From the NCBI GenBank assembly GCA_016748015.1, contig JAAOMT010000543.1:372001-436000 (forward strand): DNA of 64,000 nt, given 5' to 3'. The number at the start of each line of letters is the position of its first letter. The first letter of the stretch is position 1. Shown here piece by piece: positions 4,305-62,294 of this stretch. The translations under genes and the position numbers were made by a program. The stretch is from Geosiphon pyriformis uo1 (lineage: Eukaryota > Fungi > Glomeromycota). The notes below the pieces were generated by a model, which worked only from the letters and a program-made list of their open reading frames with translations, was not told the origin of the DNA and did no database searches.

Positions 4305-5475
4305 ATGTCTAGCAACCTAGGCTCTCCTCGAAATTTACCCAAAAACGCTTTATTAATTCAAAACAGAAGGGAAAATAGTTTAGAAAATGGGTCAAGTTCC
4401 GACGGCGAATGTGACTACCATGGCTTCCCAATTGAATGGCCTCAACAAGAAAACATAGAAAAATGGTTAAACCTGAAATATTATATTAAGATACCCTTAT
4501 TCCAGATCAAGTTTCGTGCCTATCCTCAACCTATCAAGCTTCGCCAGCCATTCTCCAATATGGCATTGTTGATATATCACGTTGGTACACCATACTTGTC
4601 AATTTGCTTTAATGAAATGCAAGATGAATTGGTTGTGCCGTTGGAGGGAATCAAATTTTTACGACTATCAAAAGACAATCGGGATATTATTGTTAATTTA
4701 CATGATGATTGCCCCAAGAAGGTGGGCTTTTATTGTATTATCGAGTTTTCAATGGAATTCTCAAACCGAAATGGGAATATTAATTACTTTTCACTGCAGT
4801 ATGTACACCACTCTAAAGGATTTCCAGATAAAATGCATGCTAGGCCAACAGCAAATGACCCAACTGGCGGGATTTTTGATTCGACAAACGGTTTTATTGT
4901 CACTTCTCATTATTGTGTTCAGACTTGTACTATTAAATGGGTCGAATCAGCACTGAAAAAATGTAAGTCACAGGAGCAATACAATTACTACGAATATAAG
5001 GTGGGGGCAAAATGTTTGGAATATCTAGTTTTTAGACGAAAAATTGCTGAAGTCGGACCTTTTAGAAACAGCCAAAATCCAGTGCGGTCTTACATTATGA
5101 AATGGTGAGAGTGTTAACAATTTTAATGAAATCATCTGACAGTTGCTTAACAAATTTTCACGTTTCTGCTTTATTTCTAACCTAAACTTACTACTTTTTC
5201 CATCACCCATGATTTTATCTCTTTATTAAAATACGTAGTTATATATTACGTGTGTCTTTAGAGATGAAAATCGAGCAATCAAATTCCCAACCAATCAAAG
5301 ATTCCGCGATTTTACAAATATTATTTATAACAGGTTCAAGTATCAACTAAAAGAAGCTCAGGTTGAGGCAAAATATGGATATAGAGAATTAATTAATAAT
5401 GAAAGAGTTTGGCAAATTGCTATCCAGAAGGCAAGTGGACAGGGAGTAAGAAGGATGAAAGTGTTCATTTTTTAA
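4305..5475 (+). CDS. Hypothetical protein with C-terminal PB1-like (ubiquitin-fold) domain; 4 exons (4305-4721, 4800-5000, 5066-5104, 5239-5475)
   Basis: GT-AG introns at 4722-4799, 5001-5065 and 5105-5238 give one continuous frame. The last exon LYITCVFRDENRAIKFPTNQRFRDFTNIIYNRFKY...ELINNERVWQIAIQKASGQGVRRMKVFIF* resembles the PB1 pattern. Confidence 0.7.
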
Positions 5476-5680
5476 TGATGATGTAATTTATAAAAAAAAA
5501 GGTTTTATCTTAACTTTAAAAACCAACCAGCAAATAAGTTTGCTTTTTTTACTCCGCCAAGCCATCAATTTATTCCTTTTAACTATATGGGGTGTACTGC
5601 AACAAAACCAGACAAGGTGAACATGTGGAATAAGACAGTCAGAAAAATTCAAAAATTCAAAATCTTCTTCCTTACCATAT

Positions 5681-5885
5681 TTATTCATCTCGAATGAAGT
5701 CATGGAGAACCAATTCTCATGTTTAACAGGAATTTCTTTGCAAGATTGTACCTTTTGATATTGGCATCACAGTGAAAAGGAGGAAATGGTTGATGGTTGA
5801 ATGAAAGAATAATGAAGCTTCAGAGAGAGCAATATTCACTTCCATGCTTGTATTTCTTCCTTTGTTGGACACCAGGGATGAACAT
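5681..5885 (-). pseudogene. Fanzor (eukaryotic TnpB-like) C-terminal remnant, copy A
   Basis: Minus-strand translation across frameshifts: VHPWCP..GRNTSMEVNIALSEAS/IILSFNHQPFPPFHCDANIKRYNLAKKF.../HDFIRDE*. This matches the Zn-finger/RuvC-III tail (CP..RDxNAAxNIALSGASI.LS...QPLPPF) recalled for fungal Fanzor1 and is homologous to 10488-10597. Confidence 0.65.
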
Positions 5886-5939
5886 AATAAAAAATAACTC
5901 TGGAAAAACAAAATAGCCATGTCTTTGAAGAATTGTACT

Positions 5940-8900
5940 TATTTGTAATTGCTATATTTTTATAAATTTTGTATTGTGTCCGAATTTGTTTCATTTCTCA
6001 TCAAAAATGTTCCTTAACACAGTTATTAATTTCTTGCCAATGTTCAACACAATAAATCAGCAGAGGTTTTAGCACATTAGAAAAAAACTAAGTATAGATG
6101 TGAATATGTTTTCTTTTCTGAACAATAATTTTGCCATATATCCTTTTTGTTTGAGTCTTCTGTTTTTATTATTTTGGCTAGTTTTTTTTCGTATTTTTTA
6201 TCTACACTGTGTTTCTTCTTTTTTGCTGCTTTCTTTGGGGCTTTTTCAAAAAAAGAATATTATTAACAAGGTTTATGATAATTTTGTAAAGCTTGAAAAA
6301 AAGTTGACATTAAATACATATAGTATACTATTATTAGAGCTGTTTACAAAAACTTAAAAGTAGTTGATACTAGCAAAAATAGATTTAAGAGTTTTTAACA
6401 TTGTAACAAAAGCCACAACAATATTTGATCTTTTTCAAAAAAAATAATCTTTTGGCATAAAAAAAGATGTTTTGTGATTATTAGAAGTAGATTCTTTTAT
6501 TTTGAAGACAAATAAAAAGTTAAACAGTTGAACAAAATAATTAAAAAGACAACAAAACTGTCCTAATTTGATTTTTGCTATGTACTTATTCTTTATAAAC
6601 TTATTTAATGAGTTTGTATTCAAAAAAATTATAATAATATTTGTAATCTCTGTTATTTTCAAGATTTTATTTAATATATATTATAAGTTTTTATGTTTGT
6701 AAGTTATTTTGCTAATATTTTTTGTCTTATAGTTTTAAGCTGTTGGTAAATTCCAGACTTTAAATTCCATAGTGAATTTCTAATATATACTAATTTTATT
6801 TGGTTAAGCTTTAATTTTAAAATTTTTTTGTGTAAACTTTTTACAGTATTAATTAAGTCTTTAATTTGTAATATATAGTTTTTAACTAATGTTTATTTTC
6901 AAATGATTCAAAATTTAAATTTCTATGATTAGCATAAACTTGATAACATTAATTTTGCCTTTTTTTTGGTTTAAAATTCAATTTAAGAAAGATTTTGCCA
7001 AATTTTCTTAATAAATGCGCAATTTACTTGTTAACAAATATTAATTTTTATGCAAATTAAAGTTTGTAAATTTATTCAATTTATATTGAAAAATGTTTAA
7101 AAAATAACAGATTTTTTTTTCTGATTTAGTATAAATTGGTAATTCAGTTTTTATTATCAATTAAAATATTGTATTGTTTATAAAATACGTTGTATATGTA
7201 AGTACAATATATTGAGGTTTTATTATAAACTGATTAAAAATTTTAAATAAATAAAAAAAAGCCAGCAATAATAGCAATCCTGTTAATTAGTATTGCTAAT
7301 GGTATATATATTAGATTAAAGAATTTTAGAATTAATTATTATCTGTAAATTGTTAAAAGAAAATTAAAAATCTTTACTGTTGTTATTTTTTTCTTTTTTG
7401 CAAAATATTTTTTGTGGAAAGCTGTATATTAATATTTTATAATATTTTTGACTTGGTTAACATCTTTATAACAAACAAAAAAGCCCAAATAGTTTTTGTT
7501 AATGATTTTAATTCTGTTTTTTTTGGAATTTGAATTTTATGAAGATATTGTGTTTTTTATGCTGCTTATTTTTATTAAATACATTTTTAATAAGTAATTG
7601 CAATAATTTTTTAGTTTTTTTAATCTTTTATAAAACAGAAGCCAACTGTTTATTAATGATAGTTATTCTGAAAACATGATATTTGGTGCTTTGAATTTTT
7701 AAATAGTTGATTTAGATTTTACTTTTTTGTCGGTTTTTTTTGTTAAAAATCTTCATGCCATGCTGTTCTGGCTGGTACAAAGAAAAATTCAGATAATGTT
7801 ACACAAACTCTGGTGTAAATATTATCAATTTTAATGTTTATGGCAGATATGTATGTTTTTTTTAATAAAACTTGACAAAATGCATAATTTTTTGTTATAT
7901 TAACAATAGTTAAAAACACTTTTTTTTCAAATTAATTACTATACTAGTAGAATAGTTAAATTTTGCTGGTTTTTAAACAATTTTTAATGTTAGAAGCAGC
8001 ATTTTTATTTTTATGACTTCTAATATCAACACTTTTTGCCAAATGTTTATATTAATAAAAAAAAATTTTTATCTTTTATTATAGTGATTTTTTTCTTAAA
8101 AAATACTTAATTTTGAATTGAGTTACAAGATTATTTTTTGATAATTTTTTGGGATTTTTATTCTATTTTGAAACAGTTTGCATAATTATAAAGTTCTTAT
8201 ATGGTTCTATTTTCAGCTATAGTTTTATATTAATGGAAGATTTTTTATTATTTAAAACAATAGTAAAGAACTTTTTATTTAATAATGCTTTAATTTTGTA
8301 TTTATAACATAGTTTTATATGTTTTTCGAATTTTTTTTAAAATGTTCTTTTCAATTATTAATTTAAAAATTTGATTAAGTATTATGTAAAAAATTTTACT
8401 AACTTGTTTTCATCTTCTAAAAATGCAAAATAGGGAAAAAAATTATTAATAAACTAAAATTTTTTTTTATATATTCTAAATAACTGGAAACATTAAAATT
8501 TTTAAAATATATAATATTAATAAAACTTTAATGTCTTTTTACAAAGTTATATTTTTTACTGTTATCAAAAAAAATTTTAATATCCAAAAACTTTATAGTT
8601 TTTTTCATGTTTTTGTTAACTAAAAATTTGTGTATTCTAAAATCATAGTTTTAAGAAAAACTTTTGCAAGATCAAAACATTTAATATTTAAATTATTTAC
8701 AAAAAACACTTTTTCTAAATTAATTTGATATATGGTTGGTAAAAGTTAGTTAATGTAATAATAAATATTATAATAATCTAAAACAACATAAATCTTATAA
8801 TGTTTATAATTTTCCAGATAATATTACAAAAATCTTAAGTACTTAATAAATAAACTTTTTTTTAATAACCAATTGCTATTCTATATTAACTAAGCTGTGT

Positions 8901-10480
8901 TTTTAATAAAAAATCTGTTTTAAAATAGTTACAACAATATGGTAATTATTACTCATGTTTTTATTATTATTTGTTTATTTAAGAAATAAAATATTAAAAA
9001 AAATTAAAAATATCAATATTGAAAATAATAAAAAGATTTATTGGAATAATTATCAAAGATTTTTTTCTTATTTTTTTTTGATATTTATACTGTGGTAAAA
9101 TTTTTAATTTTTCAAAAACAGTTAAACAAATTAAAAACATTTATATTATTTGTATCAATTGTTTTATTGAATTTCTCAAGTGATCTTTAACATAGTCCTA
9201 TAGTAGCAAAGCTTAATTAATGTGCATTTTTGAAATTGTGCAGTTTCTGTAATATAATATATTTTTTTATAATTATTTTAAAGATTTTTTTTTGTAAAAA
9301 GAAAAAAGTAACAAATATAAATTGTACTTATATTACTAATTGCAGCAATTTTTTAATGTGTTATTGTTAATTAATGCATAATTTGCAGGCACTTTTTATT
9401 TAAGAACTGCTTTTTAAAATCTTTAAATTACAAATAAAGAAATTATTAATAAAATAAAATATATATATATTGTAACTATTTGCTTAACCAATTTTTGGCC
9501 AGTCCAAATAGATACTATGTTCTAATTGATAATATCAAATCTTTAATATCTTAAAAGCATAACTATATATAACATTTTTGTTTGTGTTTAAAAGATTTTG
9601 ACTGGTTTTTTATGTATAAAAAAACCACAATTTTGATCACATAAGATAAATGATGTCAATAAGCAGAAATACCCTCTTTAAAAGAACTGTATTTTCATTG
9701 AATATGACAAAACAAAAAAATTATTAAGATATTGCATGATTTGTTGTACCAAGGTAAACTTGTTTATTGCAGTGAGTTCAAACACAACTGAACCCAAGAA
9801 AGAAGATATTTTGTTGCTTATCAAAGGTTTTTCTTGGTCAGAAACTGAATCAAACACTCTGTTTGTTCTTGTCATGAATTTATCATTGTTATCTTTTAAG
9901 AATTGTTCCCCTTCAAAAGCCTGTATAAAAAAAGATCTCTTTATGAAAATCTAAAACCCCATATCAGGACCAATGAATTTTGGTTAAAAGTAAACACATT
10001 TGATGCATCTTCAGGATAAAACGTTTTTATACATGTTATAGACAAAAGTTTCTCACTGTTTGATACTTTTTTTTGTTCTTTACTCAATGCAGTAATAGGA
10101 TGAGCCAAAACTACAACAGCCCCGATTATAATGGCAGAGATGGTTAATTGTTCCTAAGATTCCATAAAAGATGGTCTTTGCTCAGTGCTTTTTCACCAAG
10201 ATTGCACACTGTCAAAAAATCAAAATTAGTTAATCAAAGCTTGATGTATTAACTAATTTTTTTCGTCATCTGGCATATCAAATTTACATATTAACCTTTG
10301 ATCCTACCTCATATTTTTTCATGTGTCATGATGTATTATGTAAAAAAGATAATAAAGTTCTTTTTAAGTTATCAAAAGCCATGCAGAAATGAGATATTTA
10401 ACTCAACACTTGCCTATAATAGATCACAGGGCATTTTAAAAGCAATATATAGCACTGAATTATAAATTATCTTTTATTTG
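5940..10480. mobile_element. Hypermutated AT-rich repeat/TE relic block (unclassified)
   Basis: Sharp drop in GC, almost no CpG, stop-riddled ghost reading frames, no intact ORF. Confidence 0.5.
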
Positions 10481-10487
10481 TAATGGT

Positions 10488-10597
10488 GATGAAGGCCCAA
10501 AAAGAGCTATGTTCACCACCGCGTTTGCATCTCTTCCTCTTGTGGTGTGGTTGATCCTCCTTGCTGGACACCAGGGATGAACTCATTCGATGGCCCC
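10488..10597 (-). pseudogene. Fanzor (TnpB-like) Zn-finger/RuvC-III remnant, copy B
   Basis: Translates GAIE*VHPWCPARRINHTTRGRDANAVVNIALFG. It contains the RDxNAxxNI RuvC-III motif after a CxxxxC pair whose first Cys has become TGA. Confidence 0.75.
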
Positions 10598-10940
10598 AAT
10601 GTTATGCCCAGCTCTGAGGTAAAAGGAATTCAAGGCGAATATCTCCTTTATAACTAATTCCAAGCTATCTTGGTGACGGACGGGATAACAGCGATGGTAT
10701 TCTGATTGCTGAGGAGGAAGCCAGGAAAAAGATAAAGATAATGCCTTTTCATTAATGAAAGTCAAAATTGCTTGATCTTCATTTTGTCTGGTTTTTTTGC
10801 ACATAAAACAGCTTCCCGATTAAATCAAATAAAAAAATTAAAATTTACTTAATGTCAAAATGGCTATTGCAATTAAAAGCACGATCAGACAAAAATCAAA
10901 GAATTGATAAAGTATGATCCTGCCTTCAGCCAAATGAATT

Positions 10941-58000: not shown

Positions 58001-61000
58001 TTTTTGGTTTTAATTATTTATAATTTTATTTATCTTAAATTTAATATTATTAAGCTCTAAAATCAAATTATTATTATTAATTAAATAATCTAAAACAACT
58101 TTATAAAAAGAATACTTTAGTATAATTTAATTATACAATTTTTATTATTGTCAAAGTTTTCTGTATTTTTTAATAACAGTATTTATTTTGGATGTTTTAA
58201 CTATTTAAAATTTATAGTATTTAAAATTTCCTATATATCTTCTTAATTTTAGACAAAATAAAATCAATATTATAATAACTTAAATCAATTAATAATATGT
58301 TCTGTATTTTAAAAGTTTTAATATTATTAATAAATAAACAAATACCCAAAAGTTGTTTAAATTTAAAACCAAGACTTAATTTTAATTTCATAGTAATTTT
58401 AAATACTAATTGTTTATTTTTGGTACAATTAAATATTTTATACCAAATTTTAAAAAAATTTTATTAACTAATAAACATAAAATGTTTTTTTAAAATAATT
58501 TATATAGTATTTAAATTCTTAAATTCTTTTAATTTATTAAATATATTAGTCATAACTATAGTTTTTAATAAAAATAAATTCTTAAAGTAATTTTATTTAT
58601 TATTATTAATATTTTTAAAGTTGTATTTTTAATAATTTTTATTGGTTTGCTTGAACAAAACATTAAATTAAGTATTCAAAAAATTATCTAAATTAACAAA
58701 TATCAAAATAATTTTGTAATTAAATTAAAATACTTAGATATTTTATATATATATTGTTTAACAGGAGCAATAAAAAAACCTGTTAACAAAAATATAATTA
58801 ATTATCTTTTTTATCTCTTTAAAATTATTTTAAGTCAAAATTTTAATCTTAAAAAAACCAATAAAGAAATTACATAAACCTAATTTTAAATACTTTCTAA
58901 AACTAATATTATATTTGATATTATTTTTGTTAAAATTACTTTCTAAAACCACAAATATACTGGTGTTTATCACTTTGACAATAAAAAAATTAATATCAAA
59001 AGTTTAATCTAATTTTATGTTAAGAGATGTCTTAATATATAAACCAAGTATTATAACTAAAATTTTTTTTTAAACAATAAATAAACGAAAAAATAAATCT
59101 GAAATTTTTAAAACTTAAACATATGTTTAATTAAATTATTGTTTATAATTATTGCAATTTCAGAATCCAAAAAATTCGAATATAAACACATAAACTCTAT
59201 TAAATTTATTTATTATTTATAATTTAACATTATTTTTTAGCTTTGTTTTTGTAATAATTGAAACTATATTATTTATATTTTTATGTTATTTAATAATATA
59301 TTTTTATTTTGTAAGATTATTTATTTCTTTTATATTACATATAATAATTTTTCAAATTAAACTAGTTATTAAAAAAAGATATAAATAATTTGCTTTTAAA
59401 AACATTTTATCAAATTTTATGTATTATTATATTAATAAAACCTAACAGTTTAAATAGTTTAGCTCTAAAACTACCCAATTAAGTAATAACAAAATTAAAA
59501 ATACCAGAGTTTACAGATAATATATTGTTTAAAATTTTATTAGTATTAGATACTAGTATTAAAAATAATAAAGAAAAATAAAATATTTAACTTTATAATA
59601 TTAACATAATCTGGTTAAAAAAAAACTTTAAACTTTATTTTAGTTTATTTAACCACAAAACTGTTAATAAAAAAATAATATTAAATAAAATTCAAAAGAA
59701 ATAGAACCAATTTATTAACCAAAAAAGACTACTTAAATTTAAAATTTGCTATCAAAACAACTAAATACAAGATAAATTTTTTTTAACAAATACAGCTCAA
59801 TTATTATCTAGTATATATAAACAAACTAAGTATTTACAACTAAATATAACTTACACATTTTCTATATGTGACCAGTTATTTAAGCCAGTCAAGACTTTAC
59901 AACTTATTTAATTAAAAAAAACATATCAATATATAAAAAATAAATAAAATTCAAAAATTAAACAAATTTTTATGATTATTTTTTATTATAAAAGTTTTAA
60001 CAAGATTTAAAACTAAAAAATAATTATATAAATATTAATGTATTTATTATTTACTTTTTTTTATTTTTTTGCATTTAAAAATAATTTGTGCATAAAATTA
60101 TACATTATATCTTTGTATTCTATTAGTTTTATTATGCTAATTTAATAAAAATTTCAATATAAATGTTTTTAATTATTAATAATACATTAATTTATTTTTA
60201 AATAATTATTTTTCTTATATTATTAAAGTGTATTTAAAAAATAAAATTTGAATTTTTAAATTACCACAATATTTAGTTATTACAAATTATTATTATTATT
60301 ATTATTATTATAATAATATTAAATTTTGTTATTATTTTTGTAATATTTAGTTTTTTAATTTAAATTAAGCATATTATTTAATTTTTTTGAAAAAATTTAT
60401 TTTTATTTAGCACATAATAAATTTGTTTATATATTGTATTATTTTAAATATTAAACAAATATATTTTACAAATATTAATTGCTTTAAATTAAATTCATAT
60501 TCACTTAACAGATGTTCAAGTTTTAAATTTGTATTAAAAACATAATTCAGGAAATTTGCATTTTTTAAATGTAATAAATAATTTTTTTTATAATTTACTC
60601 TTAATTTGAATATAAGTAACCAAAATTTTTTTCAGTGAGTTATCAGAATTAATTAAAGAAAATCCACAATTTTGGTGGTGTATTAATTTTGTAGCTTAAA
60701 ATTTTGCCTTTTATTATAACAAATTTTTTATATTTTTTTGCTAACTTGGTATTTTTTATAATAATTTTACTTTAATTTGGTTTTGGTTTAAACTAGCTAA
60801 AAAATTACAATAAACAAAATCTTAACTTATTTTTATCAGTAAAAAAATAATCGATTGAATTAAATAAATCATAACCTTAGCATAATTTTCAGAAAAAATT
60901 AACGTTAGTCATTACGTTTTTATTAATAATTATTTTGGCTTTTCATTATGGTATTTTTTTATATTAATGCAAACATAATACAAAACTGTTGTTTAGTAAA

Positions 61001-61450
61001 TGATTTGAATAATTATGGCCAATGTCTAACATATTAAAATCAGCAATAGATAATTTTTTATTAATTAAAGTCTTGTTTTTGAAATGATAATTTGCATTTT
61101 TATTTATAAACTTGAGCTGTACTATCAAAAAAATGTTTTTTTTAGTTTTACTTAAAGCTTTTTGAACATTTTGGTTGAACTACCACAACCACATTTTACT
61201 TCCAAAAAATGGAAAGTTTTTTTATATTTTTATGCAATTTGTTTGATTTTGTAGATTTTTTAATAATAAATTTAGTATACATAAGAATGATGTATATAAA
61301 ATTGAAATATATGAAACTTATATATATTAAATCTACTATGGAGCCAAAACTACAGCATTTTACACTTTTTAAAGCAAGAGCAAGGCAAAAAGATTGTTCC
61401 TTATATTTTGAAATTAAAAAATACCCAAGCTGTTAAAAAATATGTGGACC
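55100..61450. mobile_element. Large hypermutated AT-rich TE relic (probable plus-strand ghost ORFs)
   Basis: About 6.3 kb of extreme AT content with residual coding-like patches (e.g. NNIVYLGNGWAALVKL at ~56170) and very many TAA stops. Confidence 0.55.
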
Positions 61451-62294
61451 AAGAAAAGATAACTTATGTTTACCAAAGGGGAAAGGCCAAAAAAAGCTAT
61501 TAAACGAACATTGACAAAATATTTTCAAGAAGTATAGGCGGTTATTTCCAGGTTCTATCTGGAAATAAAATAACGCATTTTAGTAAAATTCCAATATCTT
61601 AATATTAGTACCAAATAAAAACCATCGCAACCAATAATGACTAAGTGGTTACTTAATGTTCCCAACTAAGTAGCTATGTAATTAGGAGGCCATTGTTGCC
61701 ACTAGAACATTTTTTGAAATCGACTTTCCCATTTTATCCCTTAATTGTCCTGAAATATATTCTGCCAAGTTCCCTTTAGTAAAGACCATTGAATAGTGAA
61801 CGGCAGCTTGGTCAGAATAGTGTTATGATAAAGACTCCGGAATTGTTTGTATGACCACTTCTCTGGTGTGTGAGTATTCAAATATTCCATGAGTGCTATT
61901 GTCGAAGTAGAGTTGTAAAGTAACTAGTAGAAAATATTATTGTCATTTTGAAAAATATTACCTTTATGACCAGAATAATGTGAAATTGGGATGTTAGATG
62001 TCGATATTGTTGTAGAAGTGAATAGAAGGCGCGAAACGTTGAAAAAAAGGCTGAATACATAATAACGATTCAAATTAGAGACAAAGACAGTGAAGTCTAG
62101 AGATCTTGGAAAGATTAATAACAGCATACATGTTAATAAGTTTTTAGTTCATAGCTACTAGCAGCAAAACAGAGGTATTTTTCACTTAAATAATTGTGCA
62201 GGTAGCAAGCAGTAATAAAAGATTTTCGAGTGATGTTGCCAAGTTACCACATGTTAAAATAAATGATTAAATTTCTAATTCTAATTAAGTCTAT

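What the first reader, a model, noticed from the sequence alone, without database searches (positions are those of the whole stretch)
5490..5885. Fanzor 3' end followed by a candidate omega-RNA region
Seen: the minus strand encodes a decayed Fanzor-like tail through to its stop (5681), then ~190 nt of non-coding sequence of mixed composition with short inverted repeats (AGCAAA-taag-TTTGCT at ~5528-5543; GGTTTT...AAAACC at 5501-5524). Established: TnpB/Fanzor omega-RNA scaffolds lie at or overlap the 3' end of the ORF, and the guide comes from flanking DNA. Inference: this is a nuclease-dead remnant that may still carry an omega-RNA. Its adjacent guide segment would run into the 3' end of the convergent gene ending at 5475.
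Basis: partly seen in the sequence, partly recalled or inferred. Interest (0 to 1): 0.8.

Follow-up and report, generated by a model that had tools for sequence, protein, structure and literature searches.

The report
Dead Fanzor gene end in transposon
The stretch is the decayed last part of a Fanzor-type (RNA-guided nuclease) gene together with the terminal repeat of the old DNA transposon that carried it in the fungus Geosiphon pyriformis. It is an ordinary genomic fossil, and nothing shows that it still makes a guide RNA.

Summary
The minus strand of window 6428-5684 is a Fanzor1-like pseudogene that ends at the TAA at 5681-5683. tblastn with relative P0024 gives E 2.4e-35. A profile of relatives hits the solved Fanzor1 structures PpFz1 (E 1e-4) and SpuFz1 (E 3.5e-4).

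The copy is dead. It has 7 stops, at least 3 frameshifts and a 20-codon deletion, and all three RuvC catalytic residues are lost.

The boundary needs correcting. The conserved element ends at 5589, not 5490. A 36-bp terminal inverted repeat lies at 5589-5624 and a 4-bp ATAT target duplication at 5585-5588.

The tail plus this end also forms a ~550-bp MITE with at least 46 copies. This is like the ORF-less 'ghost' elements of Spizellomyces. The same TIRs bound 5-8.5 kb elements that encode a DUF7869 transposase, and the AWWT target duplication points to a Sola2-like transposon.

Every copy of this Fanzor family found in the genome is broken.

The omega-RNA remains unshown. The omega-RNA-equivalent region (about 5589-5775) is the best-conserved part between two near-full-length relatives from other sources. 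But folding, covariation and Rfam give nothing, and no RNA run was listed.

This is a new member of a known kind. Two other first-reader notes mention Fanzor relics elsewhere in this genome.

The parts
5490..5584 (.). It is not part of the element.
   Evidence: No genomic copy extends past 5584-5586. The inverted repeats are at chance level. Folding gives z = +0.38.
5585..5588 (.). Left 4-bp target-site duplication, ATAT. Its decayed partner ATAA lies at 10804-10807.
   Evidence: Matching 4-bp AWWT duplications flank other copies: ATAT in most, ATTT in L017, AAAT in L020. The window's right end was read.
5589..5624 (+). Left 36-bp terminal inverted repeat (GGGGTGTACTGCAAC...).
   Evidence: The 29-nt TIR core has 117 genomic matches against 0 for the reversed control. 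There is a single match in the window. Copies were aligned.
5625..5680 (-). [quoted passage not shown] Together with the TIR and the last ~90 nt of the ORF it is the omega-RNA-scaffold equivalent by analogy with SpuFz1.
   Evidence: The stretch is conserved in L064 and L066: 12 of 90 columns vary downstream of the stop. No structure signal was found.
5681..5683 (-). TAA stop codon of the Fanzor-like reading frame (...FIRDE*).
   Evidence: It matches the ...SIRDE end of P0001, P0002 and P0024.
5684..6428 (-). Fanzor1-like pseudogene, C-terminal ~250 codons. It covers the RuvC-I surroundings, HC.GHWQG, NKYNSSKTW (from NEYNTSKTC), VHPWC, and KGRNTSMEVNIAL (from RGRDANAAANIAL). Weaker similarity runs up to about 6680.
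   Evidence: tblastn with P0024 gives E 2.4e-35; P0012 extends to 6680. Profile A4 hits C673:377884-378282, which is window 5884-6282, at E 4.6e-21 with 7 stops.
5589..10803 (-). The whole 5.2-kb non-autonomous element, with an AT-rich decayed interior and about 10 related copies.
   Evidence: The interior 5870-10480 has about 10 genomic relatives at 65-73% identity. It is collinear with L023 while the flanks are unrelated.
10487..10803 (-). Right-end part, equal to MITE positions 224-537. It holds a second fragment of the Fanzor tail (VHPWCPARRINHTTRGRDANAVVNIAL, 10582-10490) and a right TIR with an 8-nt terminal deletion (about 10775-10803).
   Evidence: It is 89.5% identical to the MITE consensus, against 79.5% for the left end.

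Best explanation
Window 5589-5885 is the 3' end of an old, dead DNA transposon (5589-10803) in Geosiphon pyriformis.

The element carried a Fanzor1-type TnpB-like nuclease gene on the minus strand. What remains is the gene's last ~100 codons, the stop at 5681-5683, a 56-nt spacer and a 36-bp terminal inverted repeat next to a 4-bp ATAT target duplication.

The element has no transposase of its own. It shares its TIRs and AWWT target duplication with 5-8.5 kb elements that encode a DUF7869 DDE-type transposase (Sola2-like by TSD). Inferred: it was moved in trans by that enzyme, which recognises the TIR and subterminal DNA.

A ~550-bp deletion derivative is a MITE with at least 46 copies. It keeps both ends and the last 103 codons. 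Recombination between two copies of the tail segment would explain it (inferred).

By analogy with SpuFz1, the active ancestor would have transcribed an omega-RNA from the ORF's 3' end through the TIR into the flank (inferred, not shown).

In this copy the nuclease is destroyed. The DNA has decayed by C-to-T changes at CpG. No intact partner nuclease of this family was found in the genome. The most likely present function is therefore none.
For: Repeat and boundary:
-.

Fanzor homology:
- Profile A1 found 23 proteins, and their sequences carry the D...E...C4...RD signature.
- PDB hits are PpFz1 at E 1.1e-4, SpuFz1 at 3.5e-4 and Cas12f at 0.22 (earlier run).
- PF07282 matches are sub-threshold, E 0.009-0.05.
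- hhalign places RDANAAVNIAL on DRDVNGARGIFL of the genome's canonical Fanzors.

Window pseudogene:
- tblastn gives E 2.4e-35, with 7 stops, a 20-codon deletion, three frame changes and loss of the D/E/D residues.

Past coding selection:
- Variable columns at codon positions 1/2/3 are 11/10/32, chi-square p = 2e-5.

No intact copy:
- All 38 A4 hits in G000 are short or carry stops.

Transposase partner:
- DUF7869 at E 1.6e-16 in the conserved core of L017-L022, which have the same TIRs.
- 4-bp AWWT target duplications.
- Sola2-Fanzor1 chimeras with AWWT duplications are described in PMC3627910.

Decay:
- 79.5% identity to the consensus, 13 of 14 CpG sites lost, and 39 of 60 mismatches are C>T or G>A.

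Organism:
- P0006 is KAG9284042.1 of Geosiphon pyriformis. Its contig length equals that of C784.
Against: - Pfam gives no hit for the window's own peptides or for the MITE peptides. The A1 profile alone finds nothing in the PDB. The Fanzor link rests on intermediate relatives.
- The AlphaFold model of the relatives' C-terminal half was unusable (pLDDT 39.5), so no fold-level confirmation exists.
- The Sola2 assignment rests on the TSD pattern and a weak PF07592 similarity only.
- The left and right ends differ in divergence from the consensus (79.5% vs 89.5%). The 5.2-kb unit may therefore be a composite of two insertions that later moved together.
- The genome search scores only the best candidates, so an intact copy could have been missed.
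Confidence: 0.85

Rival explanations
1. The locus, and the MITE copies in general, still produce a functional omega-RNA. The scaffold would be about 5775-5589 and the guide about 5588-5570. A Fanzor supplied in trans would use it, so non-autonomous copies would profit from RNA-guided homing.
For: - The architecture equals that of SpuFz1 and its 134 ORF-less 'ghost' elements (PMC10432273).
- The MITE keeps exactly the ORF's 3' tail plus the 3' end.
- Between two near-full-length elements from other sources, the last 90 nt of the ORF (0.91 identity) and the 90 nt after it (0.89) are the best-conserved parts, against 0.50-0.88 elsewhere.
- Third codon positions vary less in the last 30 codons: 5/30 vs 27/52, p = 0.002.
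Against: - No intact nuclease of this family was found in the genome.
- The window copy is 20% diverged, with its CpGs gone.
- Folding z-scores range from +0.05 to -1.2 on the window, a MITE copy and the consensus.
- RNAalifold gives -1.6 to -7.9 kcal/mol. One compensatory pair stands against two broken ones, and covariation equals shuffles at 237/500.
- The spacer is not better kept among copies than the rest: 0.87 vs 0.91-0.95.
- The conservation is explained equally well by transposase binding to subterminal DNA.
- No RNA run was listed.
Confidence: 0.08
2. The resemblance to Fanzor is a chance motif. The stretch is only a MITE or part of the 3' UTR of the convergent plus-strand ORF that ends at 5475. 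The AGCAAA hairpin followed by a T-run would serve as a 3'-end signal.
For: - There are no direct Pfam or PDB hits for the window or MITE peptides.
- hhalign to the genome's canonical Fanzors is not significant (P 0.095).
- The hairpin plus T-run lies 55-70 nt after the stop at 5475.
Against: - tblastn at E 2.4e-35 to a protein family that carries all Fanzor signature motifs, in the right order.
- The family profile hits two solved Fanzor1 proteins at E <= 3.5e-4.
- The third-codon-position excess proves a coding past.
- The repeat boundary at 5589 separates the element from the flank.
Confidence: 0.04
3. The tail has been recruited as host coding or regulatory sequence (exonised), as seems to have happened to one MITE copy in a bZIP gene model.
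For: P0006 (KAG9284042.1, 716 aa, with bZIP and Aft1 domains) ends in 60 residues identical to the MITE tail at C784.
Against: - At the window locus there is no open frame longer than 92 codons.
- Frames are broken three times within 200 nt, and no upstream exon is evident in the AT-rich interior.
- The P0006 model may itself be an annotation artefact.
Confidence: 0.03

Closest known systems
Fanzor1 elements of fungi (SpuFz1 of Spizellomyces punctatus, PpFz1 of Parasitella parasitica) and their 'ghost' Spu-1 elements (Saito et al. 2023, PMC10432273)
   Same: - A TnpB-like nuclease ORF reads toward a transposon end.
- A short spacer separates the stop codon from the terminal inverted repeat.
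- ORF-less ~550-nt derivatives with the same inverted repeats exist in many copies.
- The glutamate of the acidic triad sits in the [DN]E[FY]xTS motif.
- The family profile hits both solved proteins.
   Different: - The sequence is very divergent: PF07282 is below threshold and phmmer of P0028 finds nothing in the PDB.
- The TIR is 36 bp rather than 30, and the target duplication is 4-bp AWWT.
- The derivative here keeps about 103 codons of the ORF tail.
- All copies in this genome are dead, and no omega-RNA has been observed.
Sola2-Fanzor1 chimeric transposons of dictyostelids (DFa-1/2/3, PPa-1/4/5; Bao & Jurka 2013, PMC3627910)
   Same: - Fanzor1-only elements share ends with a transposase-encoding element.
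- The target duplication is AT-rich, 4 bp, AWWT.
- The protein signature D-X-[TS][TS]-X-X-C4 zinc finger-X-RD is present.
   Different: - The host is a glomeromycotine fungus, not an amoebozoan.
- The TIRs are 36 bp rather than 12-13 bp.
- The transposase is identified only as DUF7869 with a faint PF07592 similarity, so membership of the Sola2 superfamily is inferred, not shown.
Bacterial IS200/IS605 TnpB-omega-RNA and its ORF-less derivatives
   Same: The guide RNA is encoded at the 3' end of the nuclease ORF and the transposon end, with the guide taken from the flank. Short non-autonomous derivatives keep the ends.
   Different: The host is eukaryotic, and the carrier is a cut-and-paste TIR transposon with target duplications rather than a TnpA Y1 or serine recombinase element. 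The RNA is unproven here.

Membership tests
Fanzor1 / TnpB superfamily (protein) | Ordered signature D ... [TS][TS]xxC - C4 zinc ribbon - X(5,50) - RD (Bao & Jurka 2013) | tested here: met
   Relatives P0024, P0012, P0028 and P0029 show GxDPG, [DN]E[FY]xTSKTC..C, C(V/S)xPxC and RGRD.NAA. The window aligns to all of these segments in order.
Fanzor1 / TnpB superfamily (protein) | Significant sequence similarity to established members | tested here: met
   Profile A5 against PDB sequences: PpFz1 9cf0 at E 1.1e-4, SpuFz1 8gkh at E 3.5e-4, Cas12f at 0.22. The link is indirect, because the window and MITE peptides alone give no hit.
Fanzor1 / TnpB superfamily (protein) | Pfam Cas12f1-like_TNB (PF07282) above the gathering score | tested here: not met
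   The best score is 16.6 bits against a cut-off of 26.3. None of the 118 genomic PF07282 hits lies in contig C673. This family is a divergent branch that the model misses.
Fanzor1 / TnpB superfamily (protein) | RuvC fold with an inserted zinc ribbon | tested here: inconclusive
   The AlphaFold2 model from the 10-sequence alignment had a mean pLDDT of 39.5. It was too poor for a fold search, so none was run.
Active Fanzor nuclease (this copy) | Intact ORF with the catalytic D, E and D | tested here: not met
   There are 7 stops, at least 3 frameshifts and a 20-codon deletion. GTDPG is lost, NEY has become NKY, and RGRDANAA has become KGRNTSME.
OMEGA system (nuclease plus omega-RNA) | Non-coding RNA transcribed from the ORF 3' end and transposon end, with its guide in the flank | not testable with these tools
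   No RNA run was listed for this organism. The geometry fits (92 nt from stop to element end), but folding, alifold, covariation and Rfam give nothing.
MITE / non-autonomous TIR transposon | Terminal inverted repeats, a target-site duplication, many short copies, and an autonomous partner with the same ends | tested here: met
   The TIR is 36 bp and the TSD is 4-bp AWWT. There are at least 46 DNA hits and 117 TIR hits. The DUF7869-encoding elements L017-L022 share only the TIRs.
Sola2 superfamily | Sola2-type DDE transposase and a 4-bp AWWT target duplication | tested here: inconclusive
   The TSD pattern is met. The transposase matches only DUF7869 (E 1.6e-16) and faintly PF07592 (E 0.08). 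No comparison with named Sola2 transposases was possible.

The most novel reading that the evidence does not exclude
The ~550-bp MITE may be a eukaryotic 'guide-only' OMEGA element. It would keep the last ~100 codons and the 92-nt 3' end because these encode the omega-RNA scaffold. Each of the dozens of copies would then offer its own flank as a guide to a Fanzor made elsewhere. The strongly conserved GTRAGK...CTGAC...TTGCAG intron-like signal in the stop-to-TIR spacer might take part in processing that RNA.
Probability: 0.08. Interest if true: 0.65.

Novelty: new member of a known kind. Interest (0 to 1): 0.32.

Why it matters
It adds a divergent Fanzor1 branch. Relatives occur in Geosiphon, Mortierella, Lichtheimia, Morchella and soil metagenomes. 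Pfam's TnpB zinc-ribbon model misses this branch, so surveys based on that model undercount Fanzors in early-diverging fungi.

It also gives a second example, after Spizellomyces, of a numerous ORF-less derivative that keeps the presumed omega-RNA end. Here the derivative rides on a Sola2-like transposon.

For this locus itself the result is sobering. It is a methylation-worn fossil with no partner nuclease, so it is not a lead for a working RNA-guided system.

Tried and rejected
- Pfam on the window's and the MITE's stop-free peptides: nothing.
- PF07282 scan of the whole genome: 118 hits, none in this contig. These belong to another, canonical Fanzor family.
- tblastx and blastn of eight canonical Fanzor loci against the window and MITE: only noise plus one antisense-frame hit at the RuvC-III motif.
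- hhalign of the MITE tail against canonical Fanzor C-termini: aligns the right motif but P is 0.095.
- Two TIR hits near PF07282 hits (C439, C669): unrelated neighbours, or a MITE fragment downstream of another Fanzor.
- AlphaFold2 of the relatives' C-terminal half: pLDDT 39.5 and unusable, so no fold search was run.
- phmmer of P0028 against the PDB: nothing.
- Search for TIRs around the intact P0028 gene in L063: none. Its neighbour is a Cdc6/Orc1-like host gene.
- Rfam: only a chance osmY hit, E 0.67.
- RNA runs: none listed.
It was redone from files.
- The splice structure of the convergent plus-strand gene could not be settled, because the simple GT...AG junction gives an in-frame stop. 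It was left open.

Full report
**Setting.** The window is contig C673:372001-436000 of a 128-Mb, 27% G+C eukaryotic assembly. One protein found later, P0006, is KAG9284042.1 of Geosiphon pyriformis. It lies on a contig whose length (836,512) equals that of C784, and its C-terminus is identical to a repeat copy I fetched from C784.

**The observation.**
- The minus strand of 5681-5885 does not hold one open frame. It holds pieces in three frames.
- The two small inverted repeats are present, at 5501-5524 and 5529-5544.
- They are not remarkable. 16% of 94-nt tiles of this window carry as many 6-bp inverted repeats. The 101-nt stretch folds like its shuffles, z = +0.38.

**A repeat with a sharp boundary.**
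- Window 5300-6100 has 46 matches in the genome. Almost all start at 5584-5586.
- Pairs of the first ~40 nt in opposite orientation lie 430-560 bp apart. This marks a MITE.
- A 29-nt core of the terminal repeat occurs 117 times, against 0 for the reversed control. It occurs once in the window.
- An alignment of 29 copies gives a 559-nt consensus.
- Flank comparison shows a 36-bp TIR that begins GGGGCGTGC and a 4-bp target duplication. The duplication is ATAT in most copies, ATTT at both ends of L017 and AAAT at both ends of L020, which fits AWWT.
- In the window the duplication is 5585-5588 and the TIR is 5589-5624.

**The larger element.**
- MITE positions 1-274 lie at 5583-5860 and positions 224-537 at 10487-10801.
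- The interior, 5870-10480, is AT-rich and has about ten relatives at 65-73% identity.
- A copy 28 kb upstream (L023) is collinear with it but has unrelated flanks.
- The right TIR has lost 8 terminal bases and is followed by ATAA.
- The element is thus 5589-10803.
- Its two ends differ in divergence from the MITE consensus, 79.5% against 89.5%. It may be a composite that moved as a unit.
- The same TIRs and target duplications bound 5-8.5 kb elements (L017-L022). Their shared 1.9-kb core encodes DUF7869 (E 1.6e-16), with a faint similarity to the PF07592 DDE transposase.
- Those elements share only the TIRs with the MITE.
- Bao & Jurka (PMC3627910) describe Sola2-Fanzor1 chimeras with AWWT duplications, and Fanzor-only elements that borrow the ends of a transposase-encoding element. 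This case fits that pattern. The Sola2 label is my inference from the target duplication.

**Is it Fanzor?**
- Direct tests failed. Pfam finds nothing in the window's or the MITE's peptides.
- The genome's 118 PF07282 hits lie elsewhere.
- A profile of the MITE peptides finds nothing among PDB sequences.
- The MITE consensus, however, has a 103-codon frame that reads ...ECVHPRCPARRINHTTRGRDANAAVNIALSG.... hhalign puts that motif on the DRDVNGARGIFL of the genome's canonical Fanzors, though without significance.
- The exhaustive profile search gave the link. It found 23 proteins. Several extend upstream and show GxDPG, HC.GHWQG, TNEYNTSKTCPFC, ECVHPRCPAR and RGRDANAAANIALSG in that order.
- These proteins come from Morchella conica, Mortierella sp., Lichtheimia, soil metagenomes and an 802-aa intact ORF from a Logan assembly.
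- A profile of them hits Parasitella Fanzor1 (E 1.1e-4) and Spizellomyces Fanzor1 (E 3.5e-4) ahead of Cas12f (0.22) (first version).
- PF07282 stays below its cut-off.
- With P0024 as query the window gives E 2.4e-35 over 6428-5727 on the minus strand.
- The same alignment shows the damage:
  - seven stops;
  - a 20-codon deletion;
  - three frame changes;
  - the RuvC-I aspartate lost;
  - NEYNTSKTC turned into NKYNSSKTW;
  - RGRDANAA turned into KGRNTSME.

**History of the tail.** I compared three lineages: the G. pyriformis consensus, L064 from a soil metagenome, and L066 from assembly GCA_003990765.1. Across them the tail varies at 11, 10 and 32 columns of codon positions 1, 2 and 3 (p = 2e-5). 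It was therefore a selected coding sequence. In G. pyriformis itself all 38 matches to the family profile are short or full of stops. The window's left end has lost 13 of 14 consensus CpGs, and 39 of its 60 mismatches are C>T or G>A.

[quoted passage not shown] In addition, 134 ORF-less ~550-nt 'ghost' elements keep that end (PMC10432273). Here the stop lies 92 nt from the element's end, and the MITE is the counterpart of the ghosts.

In favour:
- L064 and L066 end at exactly the same TIR.
- Between them the last 90 nt of the ORF (0.91 identity) and the next 90 nt (0.89) are the best-kept parts of the whole element.
- Third positions vary less in the last 30 codons, 5/30 against 27/52, p = 0.002.

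Against, or neutral:
- Transposase binding to subterminal DNA explains the same conservation.
- Folding energies equal those of shuffles, for the window, a MITE copy and the consensus.
- RNAalifold finds only tiny hairpins, or a weak 11-bp long-range helix with one compensatory pair and two broken pairs. Covariation equals shuffles.
- Among copies the spacer is not better kept than the rest.
- Rfam has nothing.
- No RNA run was listed.

The equivalent of the scaffold is about 5589-5775 and that of the guide about 5588-5570. That is 95 nt or more past the TAA at 5473-5475 of the convergent ORF, so it does not reach that ORF's coding end.

**Verdict.** This is a fossil end of a Fanzor1-carrying, probably Sola2-type, non-autonomous transposon. 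Its placement of the RNA is off by about 95 nt, and the RNA itself is unshown. It is a new member of a known kind.

Noticed in passing
L040 (G000:C784:167600-168500); protein P0006: The G. pyriformis gene model KAG9284042.1 (716 aa, with bZIP and Aft1 domains) ends in 60 residues that are the MITE-borne Fanzor tail. This is either an exonised MITE or an annotation artefact.
   Followed up: partly
window 5589-5675 (minus strand); L064:1960-2040; L066:3410-3495: On the Fanzor strand the stop-to-TIR region looks like a ~79-nt spliceosomal intron: ATATG|GTAAGG (GTGAGT and GTGAGG in the two relatives), then CTGAC, then TTGTTGCAG|CACGCCCC. It ends 8 nt before the element's end and is kept in three lineages.
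   Followed up: no
L017-L022 (e.g. G000:C702:46000-54150); window about 60720-61530: 5-8.5 kb elements with the same 36-bp TIRs and AWWT duplications carry a conserved 1.9-kb core encoding DUF7869 (PF25273), probably the transposase. A fragment of that core also lies near the end of the window.
   Followed up: partly
G000, 118 places (e.g. L009 = C701:384126-387323): The same genome holds a second, canonical Fanzor1 family (...EAYTSKTCSQCG...DRDVNGARGI) that PF07282 detects. Many copies carry stops.
   Followed up: no
L064 (JGI 3300010376 contig) and L066 (GCA_003990765.1, RBNJ01000604.1): Both carry near-full-length copies of the divergent Fanzor family that end at the same TIR. L064 has two in-frame stops and L066 one frameshift. 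The family may therefore have been active recently in other fungi.
   Followed up: partly
L063:266-2674: An intact 802-aa member (P0028) in a Logan assembly has no detectable TIRs and lies next to a Cdc6/Orc1-like gene. It may be a domesticated or single-copy Fanzor.
   Followed up: partly
window 5584-5876 and other copies: Transposon copies have lost nearly all CpG sites to TpG/CpA. This points to cytosine methylation of repeats in this fungus.
   Followed up: partly
window 4305-5475 (+): The convergent ORF of 267 codons, plus a further coding-like exon ending at TAA 5473-5475, has no Pfam match. Its splice junction could not be resolved by eye.
   Followed up: no
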